The notes below the pieces were generated by a model. That model was not told the origin of the DNA, made no database searches, and saw nothing but the letters and a program-made list of their open reading frames with translations. 64,000 nucleotides of DNA from Octopus sinensis (Eukaryota), in contig NC_042999.1 in the NCBI RefSeq assembly GCF_006345805.1, forward strand, positions 1,674,001-1,738,000, in the 5' to 3' direction. Positions within the stretch are counted from its first letter, which is position 1; each line of letters starts with the position of its first letter. The position numbers and the translations under genes are program-made. Positions 1,736 to 57,760 of the stretch are shown piece after piece.

Positions 1736-1767
1736 ACAATAAATAATATAATATATATATATATAAG

Positions 1768-1971
1768 AATGTTTAAGTAGTCGAATGAATTATCCTAGTA
1801 TGGATAATTCGGTTAACCGATACCCGGGTAGCAAATTTACGTCAGAAAGCACGGTAGAAGCTACATGCCAAGGGCAGAAATCACGTGCTTTCGTGGGGGA
1901 ATTTGTGTGTTTTTTTACTATAAATAAATGAAAGAATGGAGTCGAACGACGATTTAACAAAATTCCTTTAT
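1768..1971 (-). mobile_element. Solo copy of the Penelope-like unit of 28514-29665, lacking the hammerhead
   Basis: Aligns by eye to 28514-28717 (tttaagtag..ggataattcggttaaccgatacc..gatttaacaaaattcctttat); (TA)n on both sides. Confidence 0.85.
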
Positions 1972-2108
1972 ATATATATATCACCGTCACCGGTGATATA
2001 TCACCGTAACCGACCAGGCTATCAGATGTTGCTACACATCGCTGGTCACAATGCGCTTCGCATTGTTTTAGCCTTGGAATGAAGCCACCCCGCTGGCTAA
2101 GTGAGCAG

Positions 2109-2195
<87 letters not shown>

Positions 2196-4689: not shown

Positions 4690-4972
4690 CATATTTTAAT
4701 ATCATTTACGTGATATGTTATATTCCTTCTCCTATTTTCCATTGAGTTAAGTTTACTTTTTTCTAAAATGTGACCTCGTGTGTACCGTTGGCGATTTTTT
4801 TCCCTCTGTCTTCCCTTCTCTGGATCTTTCCTTCTCCTATGTTTCTGACGAAGAGCTCCGCTCGAAACGTTTAAACTCTCTTTCTTTCCTTCTTTCCTGA
4901 GCATCCAGTAATACTATATTTGTTCCACGTCCTCGTGTTGTGTTTTTTTTGTGCTTTCCTGTTTGGATTAAC

Positions 4973-5323: not shown

Positions 5324-5634
5324 TGGCACGTAAAAAGCACCATCCGTTCGTGGCCATTGCCAGCCTTGCCTGGCCCCCGTGCCGGTGGCACATAAAAAGC
5401 ACCATCCGATCGTGGCCGTTTGCCAGACCCGTCTGGCACCTGTGCCGGTGGCACGTAAAAAGCACCCACTACATTCATGGAGTGGTTGGCGTTAGGAAGG
5501 GCATCCAGCCGTAGAAACATTGCCAGATCAGACTGGGCCTGGTGCAGCCTTCTGGCTTTCCAGACCCCAGTTGAACCGTCCAACCCATGCTATCATGGAA
5601 AGCGGATGCTAAACGATGATGATGATGATGATGA

Positions 5635-8186: not shown

Positions 8187-8378
8187 TCTCCCAATATCAC
8201 TTGGCAACCGATGCTGGTGTGTTTACGTCCCTGTAACTTAGTGGTTCATCAAAAGAGACTGCTAGAATAAGTACTAGGCGTATAGAGAATAACTCCTAGG
8301 GTTGATTTGCTCGACTAAAGGCGGTGCTCCAGCATGGCCACAGTCAAATGACTGAAACAAGTAAAAGAGTAAAGAGTA
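7959..8378 (+). mobile_element. SINE family A, full length (tRNA head, CORE-like block, internal microsatellite, tail)
   Basis: TGGCTGTGTGGTAA A-box, GGTTCAGTCCC B-box, internal (TA)(TG)n, tail gaaacaagtaaaagagt. Confidence 0.85.
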
Positions 8379-8831
8379 TAGTTATCAGGTGCTTTATTGT
8401 TCCAGTGTATTTGCTTTTCACAGATTTTAATACATGTCAGAAATGCTTAAGAAATTTAGCTGTGAAAAATAAATGTCACCAGGAAATATTCAACAAAATG
8501 TGTGCATTTACGCACATTTATATACTTTCTTCACAATGTGTACATGAGTTTATCTGTATACGAAGGTATTCCATTTCAGCATTGGGCCTCACAGAGGCCA
8601 ATGATTGAGATCTTTGGTGTTATGTTGTGCTTGAGAAGAAGACCCATCAAGCTGAGGAAAATCACTGGCAAGCTTGAATGTCAACAGAGGAAAATGTAAA
8701 ATAGAGCTACAAGATGAAATGCAATGATGTTAACAGAACATGTGTTTATAATGCAATGAAAAATTCCTGTCTAAATACTGCTACCGGTATTTATTATCTA
8801 CGTAGGTATATATGTATGTATGTATCTATCT

Positions 8832-28479: not shown

Positions 28480-28513
<34 letters not shown>

Positions 28514-28514
<1 letters not shown>

Positions 28515-29077
28515 AATATTTAAGTAGTTCAATGAATTATCTTAGTATGGATAATTCGGTTAACCGATACCTGGGTAGCAAATTCACGTCAGAAAAACAC
28601 GGTTGAAGCTACATGCCAAGGGCAGAGATCACGTGCTTTCGTGTGGGAATTTGTGTGTTTTTTAATACAAATAAATGAAAGAATGGAGTTGAACGACGAT
28701 TTAACAAAATTCCTTTATTCTCGACATATGTTTTGAAGGCTGCATATTCCTAATTTCGAAGGAATAAGGGGTGCATTATGCTGCCTTCTCATCAGGAAAA
28801 ACAAGGAACTTATGTCAGCATCAAGATGAACAAAAACTCTTAGATGACTGCCCACATGGAGTCCATAGCGATAACCGCTATGGACTCCGAGTGGGCAGTC
28901 ATCTAAGAGTTTTTGTTCATCTTGATGCTGACATAAGTTCCTTGTTTTTCCTGATGAGAAGGCAGCATAATGCACCCCTTATTCCTTCGAAATTAGGAAT
29001 ATGCAGCCTTCGAAACATATGTCGAGAATAAAGGAATTTTGTTAAATCGTTGTTCAACTCCATTCTTTCATTTATTT
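28514..29077. mobile_element. Penelope-like fold-back unit, copy 1: 155-bp head plus 409-bp palindrome
   Basis: Arms 28669-28870 and 28876-29077 (202 bp, 4 mismatches by my count), loop ataac; HHR in each arm. Confidence 0.85.
28933..29040 (+). ncRNA. Type I hammerhead with intact core (right arm, copy 1)
   Basis: Stem I ttttc/gagaa plus ccttg../..aaagg; CTGATGA 28951-28957; stem II GAAGGC/GCCTTC; GAAA 29012-29015; C-ATAT-G (palindrome ACATATGT); GTC with predicted cut after 29023. Confidence 0.8.
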
Positions 29078-29102
29078 ATATATATATATATAATATATAT
29101 AT

Positions 29103-29665
29103 AAATATTTAAGTAGTTCAATGAATTATCTTAGTATGGATAATTCGGTTAACCGATACCTAGGTAGCAAATTCACGTCAGAAAAACACGGTTGAAGCTA
29201 CATGCCAAGGGCAGAGATCACGTGCTTTCGTGTGGGAATTTGTGTGTTTTTTAATACAAATAAATGAAAGAATGGAGTTGAACGACGATTTAACAAAATT
29301 CCTTTATTCTCGACATATGTTTTGAAGGCTGCATATTCCTAATTTCGAAGGAATAAGGGGTGCATTATGCTGCCTTCTCATCAGGAAAAACAAGGAACTT
29401 ATGTCAGCATCAAGATGAACAAAAACTCTTAGATGACTGCCCACACGGAGTCCATAGCGATAACCGCTATGGACTCCGAGTGGGCAGTCATCTAAGAGTT
29501 TTTGTTCATCTTGATGCTGACATAAGTTCCTTGTTTTTCCTGATGAGAAGGCAGCATAATGCACCCCTTATTCCTTCGAAATTAGGAATATGCAGCCTTC
29601 AAACATATGTCGAGAATAAAGGAATTTTGTTAAATCGTTGTTCAACTCCATTCTTTCATTTATTT
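29103..29665. mobile_element. Penelope-like fold-back unit, copy 2 (period 589 bp)
   Basis: 3 differences from copy 1 by my count; the right-arm HHR lacks G12 (gccttc-aaac). Confidence 0.85.
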
Positions 29666-30724
29666 ATATATATATAATATATATATATATATATTCAAAC
29701 ATATAAGGGATGGCCATAATAGGACATCTGTCTCACTAGAAAGAGCAGTTAAACTCTAAACCACTAATAGTTGTAATTCTGAAATGGAAAGAGAAATAAA
29801 AACGTTTACCCTATATATATATATACACCAAATAAGAAAATGGAGAGGATACAAAAATGACATAGATCAGCTTGTAGACATTCTAGTCTGTCTATTTATT
29901 CCAATGTATTTGAATGTATTAGAAGAAGTCATACACATGTATTTACCATGTATTTCATACACATGTAGTAATATTACAGAAAAGAGCAAAAGATCAAATT
30001 GTCAGTAGGTTTTAGTTGCTTACGACCATTTCTGCCAAGGGGCAACGAAATCCTCCATGCCATCTCCATCTCTTCAGTGTTCTGTAGGGATGGGCAGATA
30101 AAGTATGGATGATGAATGAGCATCTAGGCTTCTTCAGAGGGTCTAAGTGTTTGGGGCGGGGCTGGGGGACTAATACATATAAGAAACAGTTAACAATAGG
30201 TGCAGTGTGTTTATCTTTTGTAAAAAGAGCAAAAAAAGTATGAGAATGTGAGTGAAGTACATCTTAGTATTATGATTTGGGTACATCCAAATCATTATAC
30301 TAACATGTACTTCACTCACATTCTCATGTTTGTTCTTTTTCTTACTCCTATTCTTTTTCTGCCCTTTTTCTTGACCCAAAGTCAGACCAGAGAGTTTCGT
30401 AACACACCATCATAAGCACACACACTGAATCAATAACTTCAGAGTGGTCCCTGTATTGTTTACCAAGGTGTTATGGCTCATTTTCTAATATTCCTCGTTA
30501 CCATTGTAATGATAACGGGCTATTATCTTGCTACCTTGTCTTACTTACCTCTCAAAGATACTTATCTTGGTATATCAAAGAACAAACAATGCCTTTGGGA
30601 GGTCTCTGTATGTTATTTCTAAATATTATGGCTAAAATATGCAATGCGATACACTGTTTCGTAGCACCAGTATATTCTACAAAATGAGAAGAATGCAGTC
30701 TTTCTTTCATCTTTCAGATGAATA

Positions 30725-31130
30725 CATCATCATCATCATCATCATCATCGTTTAACGTCTGTTTTCTGCGCTAGCACGAGTTGGACGGTTCGACCGGGGT
30801 CTGGGAAGCCAGGGCTGCACCAGGCTCCAGTCTGATCTGGCAGTGTTTCTACAGCTGGATGCCCTTCCTAACGCCAACCACTCCGCGAGTGTAGTGGGTG
30901 CTTTTTACATGCCACCTGCACAGGTGCCAGGGGGGTCTGGCATCGGCCATGATCGGTTGGTGCTTTTTTAACATGCCACCGGCACGGAAGCCAGCCAAGG
31001 CAGCGCTGGCATCAGCCACGTTCGGATGGTGCTTTTTATGTGCCACTGGCACAGAAGCCAGTAGAGGCAGTGCTGGCAACGGCCACATTCGGATGGTGCT
31101 TTTTATGTGCCACCGACACAGGTATCACAA
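30725..31130 (-). mobile_element. Family C, four units
   Basis: Reverse complement of the family C tail and units. Confidence 0.8.
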
Positions 31131-33075: not shown

Positions 33076-33245
33076 GTTCTATATTTAAGAGATGAGGAAT
33101 TATGTATATTATTTACATTTGACAGATATTTGTCCTAATCTTGTTTGTTGTTAACACAACATTTCGGCTGGTATACCCTCCAGCCTTCATCAGGTGTCTT
33201 TGGGATATTTCGAACCTAGGTTCTTATTCCTAAGGTATTTTTTGT

Positions 33246-33282
<37 letters not shown>

Positions 33283-33357
33283 CATTCAGGTCACTGTCTG
33301 GAATCGAACTTGGAATCTTGGGGTTAGTAGCCTGCGCTCTTAACCACTATGCCATAT
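33076..33357 (-). mobile_element. Composite element: tRNA-like head, (TAA)n, hammerhead tail
   Basis: Head TGGCATAGTGGTTAAGAGCGC..GTTCGATTCC (33357-33286), AAT run, tail with HHR. Confidence 0.8.
33153..33198 (-). ncRNA. Minimal type I hammerhead
   Basis: gacac-CTGATGA-A-GGCTGG(agggtata)CCAGCC-GAAAT-GTT-gtgtt; 6-bp stem II, 5-bp stem I, loop-less stem III with U.G wobble. Confidence 0.75.
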
Positions 33358-33503
33358 CATTCCTAGAGCACCTATAACAACAGGTATTGTTTTAGTCTTG
33401 AGGTTCCACATTTTGCTAATTTCCATTTCAAGGTCTTTATACTTGCTCAGTTTATGGTAGGTCTTGACAGATATATTTATGTCTATTGGGACAGCCATAT
33501 CGA
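33355..33503 (-). pseudogene. Dong/R4 endonuclease fragment, cut off by the composite element
   Basis: IDMAVPIDINISVKTYHKLSKYKDLEMEISKMWNLKTKTIPVVIGALGM. Confidence 0.85.
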
Positions 33504-33576: not shown

Positions 33577-34272
33577 GTTTGACTTTTGCTTTATATTTGT
33601 ACAAATTGGCCCCAAGTCTCACCAAGGGACCTCAAGAGACAACAGGTTGAAGTTCACGTTGTTGTTATGCCTAGTGAGCCATATATTTGGTTGTTTTTTT
33701 TGTGTTGTACTAGTGGATGTTTAAAAGATTAAAAAATAATAATAATAAAAAAAAAAGAAATATTTTTTAAATGTTTGTTTTAAACCTTGAGATTACATAG
33801 AAAGTATTTTGCGTAGGATATGAACAGTCCCATGAGCACTATCTTTTGAATTTCTGCCATTTTGGGGTTTCCTGGTATCTGAGTTAGGTAGCAATCAGTC
33901 CCTTTTGCTATCATTCCCAGGGCACCTATGACAACAGGTATTGTTTTAGTCTTCAGGTTCCACATTTTGCTAATTTCTATTTCAAGATCTTTATATTTGC
34001 TCAGTTTTTGGTAGGTCTTGACAGATACGTTTATATCAATTGGGACAGTCATATCAATGAGGAGGCATGTTCTTTGTCTGAAGTCTTTCAATATGATGTC
34101 TGGTCTATTTGCATCTATCTTTCTGTCAGTTTGAATGGTGAAGTTCCAGAGGAGTGAGATGTGGTCATTTTCAAGCACTGGAGGTGGTTTGTGTTCCCAC
34201 CAGTTTTTTTCATGGGGCAAATCCAGGTTTTTGCAGATTACCCAGTGAATATATTGTGCAGCTCAATCATGC
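33577..34272 (-). pseudogene. Dong/R4-type LINE 3' part (restriction-like endonuclease plus 3'UTR), (AAT)n on both sides
   Basis: LLWNFTIQTDRKIDANRPDIILKD..LLIDMTVP..KLSKYKDLEIEI: PD..D..K RLE motif. Confidence 0.9.
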
Positions 34273-49309: not shown

Positions 49310-49965
49310 TCATCATTTAACGCCCACTCTCCGTGCTGGCATGGGTTGGACAGTTTGACTGAGGACTGGCAAGGTTTTTACAGCTGGGTGCACTTCGTAG
49401 TGCCAACCACTCCGAGAGTGTAATGGGTGCTTTTACATGTTACCGGCATGCACCCAGTCAGGCAACACTGCCAGCAGCCATACTCGAATGGTGCTTTTTA
49501 TGTGCCACCAGCACGGCTGCCAGTCAGGCAGCATTGGTATTGGTCATGCTTGAATGGTGCTTTTTATGTGCAACTGGTACAGGTGCCAGTCAAGTGGCAC
49601 TGGCAGTAACCACGCTCAAATGGTACTTTTTATGTGCCACTGGCATGGGTGCCAGTCAGACAGCACTGGCATCAGCTGTGCTTGAATGGTGCTTTTTACA
49701 AGCCACTGGCATGGGTGCCACTCAGGTGGCACTGGCATCAGCCATAACAACGATTCTACGTGGTTCAACAGGTTTTTACAAGCACAGTATATTGCCAGCT
49801 GATTGAAGGACACTTTTAAACCGACCAGTTCTGCAATACTGACATCAGCCATGGGTATTATCTCACTTGACTTGCTGGGTCTTCTCAAGCACAGCATATG
49901 CCCAAAGGTCTCGGCTGCTTGTCATTGCCTCTGTGAGGCCCAACGTGTGAAGGTTATGCTTCACT
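49310..49965 (-). mobile_element. Family C, long form with about six units and extra 5' region
   Basis: Repeated atggtgctttttatgtgccac units; the 5' region also occurs inverted at 8570-8680. Confidence 0.75.
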
Positions 49966-52269: not shown

Positions 52270-52895
52270 ATCGTGGCTGTATGGTAAGTAGCTTGCTTAC
52301 AAACCACATGGTTCTGGGTTCAGTCCCACTGCGTGGCACCTTGGGCAAGGGTGTTCTACTATAGCCTCGGGCCGATCAAAGCCTTGTCAGTGGATTTGGT
52401 AGACAGAAACTGAAAGAAGGCCATAGTATATATGTATATATATATATATAAATCTAATATAGAATAAAATTTTTCGAAAAAATTCTATCAATGGCCAGCA
52501 TATTAAAAAATACCTTTAAAAGATAAATTTATAAACAACTTATAAACAATGGCAAAAGAAAAAAATTCTAATGCCAAATATGCCAAAGATAGACAAATCG
52601 TCAATAACCATATAATTTATCACTATAAGCACGCGTCTCGAGACATACATACATATATGTATGTATGTATGTATGTGTTTGTATGTGTTTGTGTGTCTGT
52701 TTTGTCCCCCCAACATCGCTTGACAACTGATTCTGGTGTGTTTATGTCCCTGTAACTTTGCGGTTTGGCAAAAGAGACTGATAGAATAAGTACTAGGCTT
52801 ACAAAGAATAAGTCCTGGGGTCGATTTGCTCGACTAAGGGCAGTGCTCCAGCATGACCACAGTCAAATGACTGAAACTAGTAAAAGAGTAAGAGT
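52270..52895 (+). mobile_element. SINE family A with a 200-bp AT-rich insert (52445-52645) in its internal (TA)n
   Basis: Head 52270-52430, tail 52680-52895. Confidence 0.75.
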
Positions 52896-52909
52896 ATACA
52901 TAATTTTGA

Positions 52910-53490
52910 TTTATGGAAACTCAGTAATACTGGTCATCCTCTATAACTTCTTAAAACCCAGAAAAACCATTACTGCAGAAACACATTGCCATGAAATTGC
53001 CAAAATGAATGAAAAACTGCTATTCCTCTGTCTCAGACTGGTCAGCAGAAGAGAGCCAATCATTCTTCATGACAATGCTCGACCACACGTTTCACTAATG
53101 ACACTCCAAAAGTTGAAGGAACTTGGCTACAAAGTTCTTCCCCACCCACCTTATTCCCCAGAATTTTCTCCTACCAATTACCACTTTTATAAGCACCATA
53201 ATGGTTTCCTGCAAGAGAAGCCGTAGAAACACTGCCAGATCTGACTGGGCCTGACGAACCCTTCTAGCTTCACAGACCCCAGTTGAACCGTCCAACCCAT
53301 GCTAGCATGGAAAGCAGACGCTAAATGATGATGATGATGATGATGACGGAATAAACAAACTTGTAACTCGTTAACAAAAATGTGTTGATTGTAATGGCAC
53401 TTAATTTGATGAATAAAATTTCCACATTGTTGAAATATATTGTAATGAATTTCATGTTTCAAAACGTTGCTTACTTTTTACTCAACCTGA
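52910..53490 (+). pseudogene. mariner transposase 3' half and right TIR, interrupted by a family C fragment (53221-53348, minus)
   Basis: FLKPRKTITAE..ILHDNARPH..VLPHPPYSPEFSPTNYHF; after the insert GINKLVTR*QKCVDCNG; TIR-like ttactttttactcaacctga. Confidence 0.9.
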
Positions 53491-56717: not shown

Positions 56718-57760
56718 TTCCATCAAGGTCGACTTTGCCTTTTATCCTTTCGGGGTCAATAAATTAAGTACAAGTGAAAGACTGGGGTCAATGTAATCGA
56801 CTCGATCCCCTTCTCCGAGCTGCCCTTTATTAAAAAGAATTAATTATCATTATTATTATTATTATTGTTAAGGTGGTGAGCTTGCAGAATCATTGACATA
56901 CCAGCTGAAATGCAGAATGGTATTTCGTTCTGAGTTCAAATTCCGCCAAAGTCGACTTTGCCTTTCATCCTTTTGGGGTCGATGAATTAAGTACCAGTTA
57001 CACACTGCGGTCGATGTAATCAGCTAACTTCTTCCCACCAAATTTCAGGCCGTGTGCCTATTGTAGAAAAGATTACAATTATTGTTGCTGTTGTTGCTGC
57101 TGTTGTTGTTAAGGTGGTGTAACTGGCAGAAATGTTAGCACGCTGGGTGGAATGCTTAGCGGTATTTCATCTGCTGCTATGTTCTGAGTTCAAATTCCAC
57201 TGAGGTCGACTTTGCCTTTCATCTTTTCAGGGTCGATGAAATAAGTACCAGTTACACACTGGGGGTTGATGAGGCAAGTGAAGTTGAAATCGAAATCAAA
57301 CTCAGTGACTGGCATCCGTTGCTAGTGGAGCACTAAGAGTACCATACGAGTGAGATCGTTGCCAGAGCAACAAGCTGGCCTCTGTGCCGATGGCACGTTA
57401 AACACACCATTCGAGTGTGATCATTACCTGTGTCGCCTTACTAGCACTTGTGCTGGTGGCACGGGAAAAAAACATTTGAGCGAGGTCATTGCCAGTGCCA
57501 CTGAACTGGCTCCTGTGCAGGTGGCACATAAAAAGCACCATTTGAGCATGGGCGTTGCTAGTACCACCTAACTGGCCCTCATGCCGGTGGCACATAAGAG
57601 CACCCACTACACTCTCGGAGTGGTTGGCATTAGGAAGGGCATCCAGCTGTAGGGACCATGCCCAAGCAGGCAGTGGGTATATTAGTTCTTGTTAAATCAT
57701 CCAACTTGTGCCAGCATGGACTGTGGACATTAAATGGTGGTGATGACTCTGGCAATGAGG
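56718..57760 (+). mobile_element. Three family B pieces (56718-57270) followed by family C (57272-57760)
   Basis: Family motifs as above. Confidence 0.75.

What the first reader, a model, noticed from the sequence alone, without database searches (positions are those of the whole stretch)
28514..29665. Tandemly duplicated 409-bp fold-back with a hammerhead ribozyme in every arm; only one of four cores intact
Seen: two units at 589-bp period, each a 155-bp head plus a palindrome of 202-bp arms (about 98% identical) around the loop ataac, flanked by (TA)n. Each arm spells a type I HHR (CTGATGA, GAAGGC/GCCTTC stem II, GAAAC-ATAT-GTC, extended stem I) pointing away from the loop. Both left arms have G12A and the copy-2 right arm lacks G12, so only 28951-29023 is canonical. 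Established: minimal type I HHRs with a palindromic stem III that cleave as dimers mark Penelope-like pseudo-LTRs, and Penelope-like elements often form inverted arrangements. Inference: a young, ORF-less Penelope-dependent or retrozyme-like element whose read-through RNA is a long dsRNA that would sequester its own ribozymes. I cannot tell whether this family is already catalogued.
Basis: partly seen in the sequence, partly recalled or inferred. Interest (0 to 1): 0.85.

Follow-up and report, generated by a model that had tools for sequence, protein, structure and literature searches.

The report
Decayed hammerhead-ribozyme retroelement fold-back in octopus
This is a real, tandemly duplicated inverted pair of copies of a short non-coding retroelement carrying a hammerhead ribozyme, sitting in a (TA)n microsatellite of an octopus genome; its layout is the usual insertion scar of Penelope-like or retrozyme elements, and three of the four ribozymes are already mutated, so it is an ordinary new family member rather than a new kind of element.

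Summary
There are two units with a 589-bp period. Each unit is a 155-nt segment plus 202-nt inverted arms (98% complementary) around the loop ATAAC, bounded by (TA)n. Every arm carries a type I hammerhead pointing outward. Only 28951-29023 (+) has an intact core: both left arms have G12A and the second right arm lacks G12. Rfam Hammerhead_1 aligns full-length to the intact copy only, below threshold (22.7 vs 34 bits) because helix II carries a 50-nt insert.

The host is an Octopus. A third, non-palindromic copy at 1766-1971 shows that the "head" is really the 3' end of the element, read on the minus strand: arm + rc(head), about 357 nt, 37% GC. That copy starts 4-6 nt after the ribozyme cleavage site.

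The anatomy matches published Penelope-like insertion signatures: head-to-head copies with 3' ends outward, one end with an extension, (TA)n at all ends, and no ORF. The ribozyme defects look like decay: the shared left-arm change and one later change are CpG-to-TpG, and another is a 1-nt deletion. The second unit most likely arose by unequal exchange between the (TA)n tracts.

No further copies could be retrieved, so dependence on Penelope-like elements is inferred, not shown. Verdict: new member of a known kind, modest interest.

The parts
28514..29102 (.). Tandem unit 1: 3' segment ('head'), left arm, loop, right arm and a (TA)n tract
   Evidence: Direct repeat with a 589-bp period; unit 1 and unit 2 are 99.2% identical.
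29103..29692 (.). Tandem unit 2, with the same layout as unit 1
   Evidence: It differs from unit 1 at 28573, 28857 and 29012 (a deletion in unit 2), and in the (TA)n tract.
28514..28668 (-). Read on the minus strand it is the 155-nt 3'-terminal segment of the element, ending ...CUACUUAAAUAUUUA(UA)n
   Evidence: It is contiguous with the left-arm tail both here and in the independent copy at 1766-1971.
28669..28870 (-). Left arm of unit 1. The sense strand is minus. Its hammerhead runs 28795..28723 with G12A (plus-strand T at 28734, CpG to TpG)
   Evidence: (found with the relaxed descriptor).
28871..28875 (.). 5-nt spacer ATAAC at the centre of palindrome 1, where the 5' ends of the two copies meet
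28876..29077 (+). Right arm of unit 1. The sense strand is plus. It ends 54 nt after the cleavage site, directly in (TA)n
28938..29036 (+). The only hammerhead with a canonical core. Core 28951-29023; predicted cleavage after C 29023; helix I 28938-28950 / 29024-29036; 54-nt helix II; helix III A-U and C-G plus an AUAU loop
   Evidence: Descriptor hit; folds; Rfam RF00163 match at 28945-29029, 22.7 bits, E = 0.0011, full-length model.
29103..29257 (-). 3'-terminal segment ('head') of unit 2
   Evidence: 99.3% identical to 28514-28664.
29258..29459 (-). Left arm of unit 2. Its hammerhead runs 29384..29312 with G12A (plus-strand T at 29323)
   Evidence: No Rfam hammerhead match.
29465..29665 (+). 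Right arm of unit 2. Its hammerhead runs 29540-29611 with G12 deleted (between 29600 and 29601)
   Evidence: No Rfam hammerhead match.
28480..28513 (.). (TA)n tract on the left of the array
29078..29102 (.). (TA)n tract between the two units. This is the likely site of the unequal exchange that duplicated the unit
29666..29694 (.). (TA)n tract on the right of the array
1766..1971 (-). Independent, older, non-palindromic copy of the same family: rc(head) plus 50 nt of post-cleavage tail (54 nt in the 206-nt arm numbering), with (TA)n on both sides. Its 5' end lies 4-6 nt downstream of the hammerhead cleavage site
   Evidence: BLASTN 92.6% over the head and 96% over the tail; sequence and alignment.

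Best explanation
**What it is.** The locus holds dead or dying copies of a short, ORF-less retroelement of an Octopus genome. The element carries a type I hammerhead ribozyme. It is most likely mobilised in trans by Penelope-like elements (PLEs), which makes it a retrozyme-type non-autonomous PLE derivative.

**The basic element (inferred).** It is about 357 nt long and 37% GC.

**How the palindrome formed (inferred).** During one insertion into or next to a (TA)n tract, two cDNAs of this RNA were laid down head to head, with 5' ends at the ATAAC spacer and 3' ends outward.
- One cDNA started at the distal 3' end. It is the left arm plus head.
- The other started at an internal ...UUUAUUU site 54 nt after the cleavage site. 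It is the right arm.
- Two routes could produce this. One is target-primed reverse transcription from both nicked DNA strands, as purified PLE protein does in vitro. The other is snap-back of a single cDNA.

**What happened afterwards (shown from the sequence).**
- The arms diverged at 3 sites. These include a CpG-to-TpG change that turned G12 of the left-arm ribozyme into A.
- The whole 589-bp unit was then duplicated, most simply by unequal exchange between the flanking (TA)n tracts, since the array is exactly two units bounded by (TA)n.
- After the duplication, one more CpG transition occurred in L1 and one G (G12) was lost in R2.

**Role of the ribozyme (inferred).** In the living family the ribozyme would cut the element RNA out of longer transcripts. 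The third copy, which begins 4-6 nt after the cleavage site, looks like a cDNA of such a cleaved RNA.

**At this locus (computed).** Any read-through transcript would fold into a 202-bp hairpin that buries the ribozyme. The one intact core is therefore probably silent here.
For: **Motif**
- Core, helices and cleavage triplet are read directly.
- The descriptor hit compares with 0.045 expected per shuffled window.
- Rfam Hammerhead_1 aligns full-length to R1 only.
- Helices I and II appear in the minimum-free-energy fold of the ribozyme alone and of the 362-nt minus-strand unit.
- The dimer cofold makes an intermolecular helix III.

**Element limits**
- The copy at 1766-1971 joins the head to the arm tail at the same junction, has no palindrome, and has (TA)n on both sides.

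**Order of events**
- Three left/right differences are shared by both units.
- Three further differences separate unit 1 from unit 2.
- At 28695/29051 the third copy has the left-arm state, so the right arm carries the derived TpG.

**PLE-type anatomy in the literature**
- PLE insertions are highly 5'-truncated and form partial tandems. They often have an inverted 5'-truncated copy adjacent and an extension ('tail') at one end only, and they favour microsatellite or (TA)n targets (PMC8557442).
- PLE protein cleaves and extends both DNA strands, prefers AT-rich DNA, and starts reverse transcription at two internal sites downstream of the hammerhead (PMC11167929).
- Pairs of hammerheads 100-700 bp apart on opposite strands have been seen in Schistosoma (PMC4209133).
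- Animal retrozymes are reported as non-autonomous PLE derivatives (bioRxiv 10.64898/2026.07.22.740005).

**Host**
- The best protein hits of a neighbouring RT fragment are from Octopus bimaculoides at 88-93% identity.
- Octopus genomes hold about 30 Penelope families (PMC13282606).

**Target**
- (TA)n covers only 4-6% of the window, yet both independent loci lie in it.
Against: - No sequence homology to any PLE pseudo-LTR or 3' end could be tested, because no octopus genome, Dfam or Repbase was available here.
- No PLE ORF was seen among the ten longest non-repetitive ORFs of the window.
- The one-sided extension here is 155 nt, not the 30-40 nt 'tail' described for PLEs.
- The two arms share the same 5' end to within 5 nt. 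That is not expected from two independent 5' truncations and requires either a defined RNA 5' end or snap-back.
- (TA)n could be a 3' tail of the element rather than its target.
- Only three copies from two loci were available, so the 5' end at the cleavage site is a single observation (roughly 3-4% by chance).
- The Rfam score is below the gathering threshold (22.7 vs 34).
- Self-cleavage was not tested.
Confidence: 0.6

Rival explanations
1. This is a genuine non-LTR retrozyme array. The 589-nt unit would itself be the replicating unit, cut out by the plus-strand hammerheads (R1, R2), circularised, and copied by rolling-circle reverse transcription into tandem DNA.
For: - Two head-to-tail units each carry a plus-strand type I hammerhead 588 nt apart.
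- GC is low at 37%.
- Helix III is 2 bp plus a tetraloop, as in invertebrate retrozymes (PMC7229834).
- Retrozyme circular RNAs are highly self-paired.
Against: - The period of 589 nt is outside the published 150-450 nt range.
- The array is exactly 2.0 units bounded by (TA)n on both sides and in the middle. That fits unequal exchange better than rolling-circle cDNA.
- Each unit holds an inverted arm, so the ribozyme would be locked in a 202-bp duplex.
- The independent copy at 1766-1971 ends at (TA)n after rc(head) instead of continuing into the next unit.
- One of the two plus-strand ribozymes lacks G12.
Confidence: 0.12
2. This is a hairpin-RNA locus kept by the host, or by the element family's own regulation. 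Plus-strand transcription would give a 202-bp dsRNA that is diced into small RNAs, or edited by ADAR, and acts against the hammerhead element family.
For: - The plus-strand hairpin is extremely stable.
- All three transition differences between the arms are oriented so that the plus-strand RNA keeps G.U pairs (28695/29051, 28734/29012, 28857/28889). The minus-strand RNA would have C.A mismatches at these sites.
- The unit is duplicated.
Against: - Three of three has a chance probability of 1/8, and CpG decay alone explains each change.
- There is also an A.A mismatch and a 1-nt bulge.
- No conservation or expression data exist.
- The microRNA-family matches in Rfam are generic hairpin matches far below threshold.
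Confidence: 0.08
3. This is a class II fold-back or MITE-like DNA element whose long terminal inverted repeats happen to contain a captured hammerhead.
For: - The inverted repeats are long and nearly perfect, with a tiny spacer.
- AT-rich and TA contexts are typical of some MITE targets.
Against: - There is no target-site duplication at the arm ends...aataca|aataaatg on the left and ...catttattt|atat on the right.
- The left arm end is not an element end. The same head-arm junction occurs in the non-palindromic copy at 1766-1971.
- Both ribozymes point outward from a common 5' point, as expected for cDNAs.
Confidence: 0.05
4. This is an assembly artefact: a fold-back chimera or a collapsed or expanded repeat.
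For: - Palindromes and tandem copies in (TA)n-rich DNA are hard to assemble. PLE structures are known to cause assembly problems (PMC8557442).
Against: - The arms differ at three fixed positions, and the same differences recur in both units.
- The two units in turn differ at three further positions.
- The palindrome is only 409 bp, much shorter than read-scale fold-back chimeras.
Confidence: 0.05

Closest known systems
Non-LTR retrozymes of animals: short tandem repeats with type I hammerheads, expressed as circular RNAs (Cervera and de la Pena 2020, PMC7229834). They were recently argued to be non-autonomous derivatives of Penelope-like elements (bioRxiv 10.64898/2026.07.22.740005).
   Same: - Type I hammerhead with a 2-bp helix III and a palindromic tetraloop.
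- No ORF and low GC (37%).
- The inferred sense unit of about 357 nt lies within the 150-450 nt range.
- The host genome is rich in PLEs.
- The element occurs in more than one copy per locus.
   Different: - The copies here are head to head, not head to tail.
- The only direct repeat has a 589-bp period and contains an antisense arm.
- Helix II is 54 nt instead of about 4 bp plus a loop.
- No circular RNA evidence exists.
- Three of the four ribozymes are mutated.
Pseudo-LTR and 3'-end fragments of Penelope-like elements with hammerheads (Cervera and de la Pena 2014, PMC4209133; Craig et al. 2021, PMC8557442; Frangieh et al. 2024, PMC11167929).
   Same: - The hammerhead lies shortly upstream of the 3' end of the insertion.
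- Copies are inverted, with 3' ends outward.
- The locus holds a tandem duplication.
- An extension is present at one end only.
- The target is AT-rich or (TA)n.
- Opposite-strand hammerhead pairs 100-700 bp apart are already reported.
   Different: - There is no RT or GIY-YIG ORF here or elsewhere in the window.
[quoted passage not shown] It is therefore not the 'min-HHR' variant.
- The one-sided extension is 155 nt, not 30-40 nt.
- Homology to a PLE was not shown.
Classical genomic type I hammerheads in repeats: newt satellite 2, Schistosoma Sm-alpha SINE-like repeats, cave-cricket pDo500 (from my own knowledge, and cited in PMC4209133 and PMC7229834).
   Same: - Type I topology and an unstable palindromic helix III that favours dimer cleavage.
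- Located in a short, non-coding, repeated element.
   Different: - Different sequence and a much longer helix II.
- An inverted rather than satellite-like arrangement.
- The host is a cephalopod.

Membership tests
Hammerhead ribozyme, type I (Rfam RF00163) | Conserved core: C3-U4-G5-A6-N7-G8-A9, G12-A13-A14, the A15.1-U16.1 pair, H17, and G10.1-C11.1 | tested here: met
   28951-29023 (+) has CUGAUGA, G-C closing helix II, GAAA, and A...U C17. This holds for that arm only: L1 and L2 have G12A and R2 lacks G12.
Hammerhead ribozyme, type I (Rfam RF00163) | Three helices around the core, with the open ends in helix I | tested here: met
   Helix I (5 bp, internal loop, 5-6 bp) and helix II (6 bp, an A.A mismatch, 5 bp, and a distal hairpin) are in the minimum-free-energy fold, z = -3.8. 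Helix III is 2 bp plus an AUAU loop, and is extended to 8 bp in the predicted dimer.
Hammerhead ribozyme, type I (Rfam RF00163) | Score at or above Rfam's gathering threshold (34 bits) | tested here: not met
   The score is 22.7 bits, E = 0.0011 in a 121-nt search. The alignment covers the full model, and the loss comes from the 50-nt insert in helix II. Nothing is found at the gathering threshold in the whole window.
Hammerhead ribozyme, type I (Rfam RF00163) | Site-specific self-cleavage after H17 | not testable with these tools
   This needs in vitro transcription of 28933-29040 as monomer and as dimer.
Penelope-like element (autonomous) | A single ORF with a telomerase-like RT and a GIY-YIG endonuclease | tested here: not met
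   The only ORFs in the element are 31-105 aa and are read from the palindrome. Pfam finds no RT or GIY-YIG domain in the ten longest non-repetitive ORFs of the window.
Penelope-like element, non-autonomous derivative or insertion | Insertion anatomy: 5'-incomplete copies, tandem and/or inverted arrangement with 3' ends outward, an extension at one end, and an AT-rich or microsatellite target | tested here: met
   Searches give the anatomy. The criteria come from PMC8557442 and PMC11167929. The extension here is 155 nt, not 30-40 nt.
Penelope-like element, non-autonomous derivative or insertion | Sequence homology of the 3' end or pseudo-LTR to an autonomous PLE of the same genome | not testable with these tools
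   No octopus assembly, Dfam or Repbase was available. Exact-pattern scans of metagenome, viral and prokaryotic collections gave 0 hits.
Non-LTR retrozyme | Head-to-tail tandem repeats of 150-450 bp, each with one type I hammerhead on the same strand | tested here: inconclusive
   Two direct units carry plus-strand hammerheads 588 nt apart, but the period is 589 bp. Each unit also holds an inverted copy, and R2 is defective. The inferred sense unit of about 357 nt would fit the size range.
Non-LTR retrozyme | Expression as monomeric linear and circular RNA | not testable with these tools
   No transcriptome data were available.
Class II fold-back element or MITE | Inverted repeats that form the element termini, flanked by a target-site duplication | tested here: not met
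   There is no duplication at 28668/28669 and 29077/29078. The left junction is internal to the element, as shown by the copy at 1766-1971.

The most novel reading that the evidence does not exclude
The fold-back may not be a mere scar but a working hairpin-RNA locus. Plus-strand transcription of the duplicated 202-bp inverted repeat would yield dsRNA, diced into small RNAs or heavily ADAR-edited as is common in octopus, that acts against the hammerhead retroelement family. Pairing would be preserved by selection, since all three transitions between the arms give G.U pairs in the plus-strand RNA. A second, smaller novelty is also left open: the copy at 1766-1971 starts 4-6 nt after the cleavage site. 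A genome-wide pile-up of 5' ends there would be the first genomic evidence that hammerhead-cleaved RNA is the template of PLE-type reverse transcription. RNA-seq did not show this for the anole element (PMC11167929).
Probability: 0.1. Interest if true: 0.55.

Novelty: new member of a known kind. Interest (0 to 1): 0.3.

Why it matters
Hammerhead ribozymes in animal repeats, their link to Penelope-like elements, and the tandem or inverted scars these elements leave are all published. This locus therefore adds a cephalopod family rather than a new principle. No paper in the searched library mentions hammerheads in octopus.

Two things give it modest value:

- **A clean natural example.** The order of events can be read from shared and private substitutions: inverted insertion, arm divergence by CpG decay, unit duplication at a microsatellite, then further decay.
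- **A cheap test of an open question.** It is still unclear whether hammerhead cleavage happens before reverse transcription in these elements. This family offers a test: map the 5' ends of all genomic copies relative to the cleavage site at 29023/29024.

Tried and rejected
**Rfam at wider scope**
- At gathering thresholds on the whole window there was no match.
- At E<=10 on 1.4 kb only generic microRNA-hairpin matches to the palindrome centre appeared, far below threshold, and no hammerhead. I treat these as consequences of any long hairpin.

**Search for further copies (all negative)**
- Exact-pattern scans for a 24-nt ribozyme segment and a 23-nt head segment gave 0 hits in metagenome contigs, viral contigs and genome contigs.
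- A protein search with the 86-aa pseudo-ORF spanning the palindrome found no candidates. The aim was to catch ORFs called on other copies in public assemblies.
- Exact look-ups of two such ORFs found nothing on record.

**Other checks**
- Pfam on ten non-repetitive ORFs, looking for a PLE ORF, found only a weak mariner transposase fragment.
- ARAGORN found no tRNA genes in the window, so there is no support for a tRNA-SINE head in the 155-nt segment.

**Nested alternative hammerhead**
- A second reading is present in all four arms: CUGAUGA-GAAGG-[21 nt]-CCUUC-GAAA-U-UA|GGAA, for example at 28951-28995.
- I considered it and set it aside. Its helix I is only 4 bp including a G.U pair, I estimate about a 10% chance of occurrence given the repeated CCUUCGAAA, and Rfam aligns the long version.

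**Rolling-circle origin of the duplication**
- I judge this less likely than unequal exchange, because the array is exactly two units bounded by (TA)n.
Full report
**1. What is in the sequence**

The region 28514-29692 holds two units with a 589-bp period. The first 300 nt of the units are identical, and the whole units are 99.2% identical.

Each unit has a 155-nt segment followed by a palindrome. The repeat finder gives 206-nt arms at 98%. Pairing base by base shows that the last four positions are (TA)-like chance matches. The true arms are 28669-28870 and 28876-29077, 202 nt with 4 mismatches, around the spacer ATAAC.

(TA)n tracts lie to the left, between and to the right of the units.

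**2. The ribozyme**

In the right arm of unit 1 the plus strand reads UUCCUUGUUUUUC-CUGAUGA-GAAGGC...GCCUUC-GAAA-C-AUAU-G-UC|GAGAAUAAAGGAA. All invariant hammerhead positions are present: C3-A9, G10.1-C11.1, G12-A14, A15.1-U16.1 and C17.

- Helix I has 5 bp, a 2x2 internal loop, then 5-6 bp.
- Helix II is a 54-nt imperfect hairpin.
- Helix III has two base pairs and a palindromic AUAU loop.
- Folded alone, the 99-nt segment keeps helices I and II in the minimum-free-energy structure (-27.3 kcal/mol, z = -3.8).
- Two copies are predicted to pair through an intermolecular ACAUAUGU helix III.

A loose descriptor gave 0.045 hits per shuffled window on both strands. It required CUGANGA, helix II of at least 4 bp, GAAA, up to 14 nt, UH, and helix I of at least 4 bp.

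Rfam gives nothing at its own thresholds and nothing in a 1.4-kb search at E<=10. In a 121-nt search, Hammerhead_1 aligns end to end at 28945-29029 with 22.7 bits (threshold 34) and E = 0.0011. The cost comes from a 50-nt insertion in helix II.

The same kind of search on the left arm and the right arm of unit 2 finds no hammerhead. This agrees with the sequence:
- Both left arms, read on the minus strand, have CAAAAC, which is G12A (plus-strand T at 28734 and 29323).
- The right arm of unit 2 has lost G12.

G12 is the general base of the reaction, and G12A lowers the rate by orders of magnitude (established knowledge of the hammerhead mechanism; not tested here). So one core of four is intact.

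**3. Host and surroundings**

The window is AT-rich (26-43% GC) and extremely rich in microsatellites (137 TRF rows). It contains only fragments of mobile elements.

A reverse-transcriptase-associated ORF fragment at 33783-34220 (-) has its best matches, at 88-93% identity, in Octopus bimaculoides. The window therefore comes from an Octopus or a close relative.

Penelope-like elements are abundant in octopus genomes. About 30 families are annotated in O. vulgaris (PMC13282606; see also PMC8967140). Pfam found no RT or GIY-YIG domain in the ten longest non-repetitive ORFs of the window.

**4. A third copy changes the reading of the 'head'**

BLASTN of the parts against the window finds one more copy at 1766-1971. 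It is 92.6% identical over the 155-nt segment and 96% over the next 53 nt of the left arm.

This copy has (TA)n on both sides and no palindrome. The junction between the 'head' and the left arm is the same as in the array. The two are therefore one contiguous element, and the arm end at 28669 is not an element terminus.

Read on the minus strand, the element is: leader (75 nt), hammerhead (73 nt), cleavage site, tail (54 nt), 155-nt 3' segment, (TA)n. That is about 357 nt at 37% GC.

The right arms are inverted copies that stop 54 nt after the cleavage site, at ...CAUUUAUUU, and run straight into (TA)n. The distal 3' end...AAAUAUUUA(UA)n, resembles that internal site.

On the minus strand the third copy begins at ...AUAAAGG, which is 4-6 nt after the cleavage site (G1.1 corresponds to 28722). 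Random truncation would land that close in roughly 3-4% of cases. As a single observation, it suggests that its template RNA had been cut by the ribozyme.

**5. Order of events**

- The left and right arms differ at three positions shared by both units: 28695/29051, 28734/29012 and 28856/28890.
- Unit 1 and unit 2 differ at three further positions: 28573, 28857 and the G deletion at the 29012 equivalent. They also differ in the (TA)n tract.
- The palindrome therefore formed first, the arms then diverged by about 1.5%, the whole unit was then duplicated, and about 0.5% further divergence followed.
- Three of the changes are CpG to TpG. At 28695/29051 the third copy shows that CpG is ancestral. 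The change that created G12A in the left arms is one of these.
- The ribozyme defects are thus ordinary decay. They give no sign that selection maintains the ribozymes at this locus.
- The array is exactly two units bounded by (TA)n on both sides and in the middle. Unequal exchange or slippage between (TA)n tracts is the simplest cause of the duplication (inference).

**6. How it most likely arose and works**

The published signatures of Penelope-like insertions are (PMC8557442):
- strong 5' truncation;
- partial tandems;
- an inverted 5'-truncated copy next to the insertion;
- a short extension at one end only;
- a preference for microsatellite or AT-rich targets.

Purified anole PLE protein nicks and extends both DNA strands. 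It prefers AT-rich sites and starts reverse transcription at two internal RNA sites a short distance downstream of the hammerhead (PMC11167929). Hammerhead pairs 100-700 bp apart on opposite strands were already noted in Schistosoma (PMC4209133).

The octopus locus has the same geometry: 5' ends at the centre, 3' ends outward, two alternative 3' ends, and (TA)n at every outer end. (TA)n covers only 4-6% of the window.

I therefore read each palindrome as one insertion event in which two cDNAs of a short, non-coding, hammerhead-bearing RNA were made head to head. This happened either by priming from both target strands or by snap-back of one cDNA. The common 5' end of the arms, with only a 5-nt spacer, favours a defined RNA 5' end or snap-back over independent truncation.

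The helix III type (2 bp plus tetraloop) is the one described for invertebrate retrozyme hammerheads (PMC7229834). Animal retrozymes have been argued to be non-autonomous PLE derivatives. The element is best filed there, with PLE dependence inferred rather than shown.

In the living family the ribozyme would release unit RNAs from longer transcripts. At this locus a read-through RNA folds into a 202-bp duplex (-407 kcal/mol, z = -42).

**7. Rivals**

- **Retrozyme array proper.** The 589-nt unit would be excised by R1 and R2. This is weakened by the period, the inverted arm, the exact two-unit structure and the third copy's (TA)n end.
- **Class II fold-back or MITE.** This is contradicted by the absence of target-site duplications and by the internal nature of the left junction.
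- **Assembly artefact.** This is unlikely, because the arms and the units carry consistent, nested differences. Only reads can settle it.
- **Functional hairpin-RNA locus.** This cannot be excluded. All three transitions between the arms give G.U pairs in the plus-strand RNA. However, that has a 1-in-8 chance probability and follows from CpG decay.

**8. What could not be done**

No octopus assembly, Dfam or Repbase was available.
- Exact-pattern scans of the metagenome, viral and prokaryotic collections gave nothing.
- Protein-level tricks using the pseudo-ORFs of the palindrome gave nothing.

Copy number, the share of fold-back versus solo copies, the autonomous partner and expression therefore remain open.

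**9. Verdict**

- the 'head' is the element's 3' end;
- the fold-back is probably an insertion by-product rather than the family's design;
- the ribozyme losses are decay.

This is a new member, in a cephalopod, of a known kind. Interest is 0.3.

Noticed in passing
window 33158-33193 (-): An unrelated minimal hammerhead-like motif: gacaC-CUGAUGA-a-GGCUGG-agggtata-CCAGCC-GAAA-ug-UU|guguu. [quoted passage not shown] Rfam gives no hammerhead match even in a 91-nt search. Only 0.045 descriptor hits are expected per shuffled window.
   Followed up: partly
window 4845-4872 (+): A second minimal hammerhead-like descriptor hit: guuu-CUGACGA-a-GAGC-ucc-GCUC-GAAA-cgu-UU|aaac, with 4-bp helices I and II. 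It could be chance or a decayed PLE motif.
   Followed up: no
window 28951-28995, 29540-29584 (+); 28795-28751, 29384-29340 (-): Each arm also allows a nested, shorter hammerhead reading that shares the CUGAUGA box: helix II GAAGG/CCUUC with a 21-nt loop, GAAA, then UUA|GGAA. This is possible because CCUUCGAAA occurs twice in the arm. The reading is untouched by the G12 mutations, but its helix I is only 4 bp including a G.U pair.
   Followed up: partly
window 5324-5466, 30937-31121, 49454-49745, 57449-57604: A 63-67-nt unit (…GGTGCTTTTTATGTGCCAC…GGCAC…) is repeated in short tandem arrays at four or more places and in both orientations. It is probably an octopus SINE or satellite-like family.
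   Followed up: no
window 33320-33400 (-): A tRNA-like stretch (ggcatagtggttaagagcgcaggctactaaccccaagattccaagttcgattccagacagtgacc) interrupts a second fragment of the RT-associated ORF. It looks like a tRNA-derived SINE head. ARAGORN does not call it as a tRNA.
   Followed up: partly
window 52756-53223 (+) and 8306-8605 (+): A mariner-type transposase fragment has a weak Pfam Transposase_1 match, E = 0.0004. A second ORF shares the peptide ...RLKAVLQH.HSQMTETSKRV.... These are two decayed copies of one DNA transposon family.
   Followed up: no
window 1972-2111: Right next to the third copy, between two (TA)n tracts, lies a 130-bp GC-richer insert (caccgtcaccggtgatatatcaccgtaaccgaccagg...). Further on there is a 67-bp tandem duplication ending ...ttattttatctagtttcagctcacga. 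(TA)n tracts in this genome seem to collect insertions of several families.
   Followed up: no
whole window: Microsatellite density is extreme: TRF gives 137 rows in 64 kb, with long (TA)n, (AAT)n, (ATC)n, (TATC)n and (AC)n tracts. No Rfam family reaches threshold and no tRNA gene is found.
   Followed up: no
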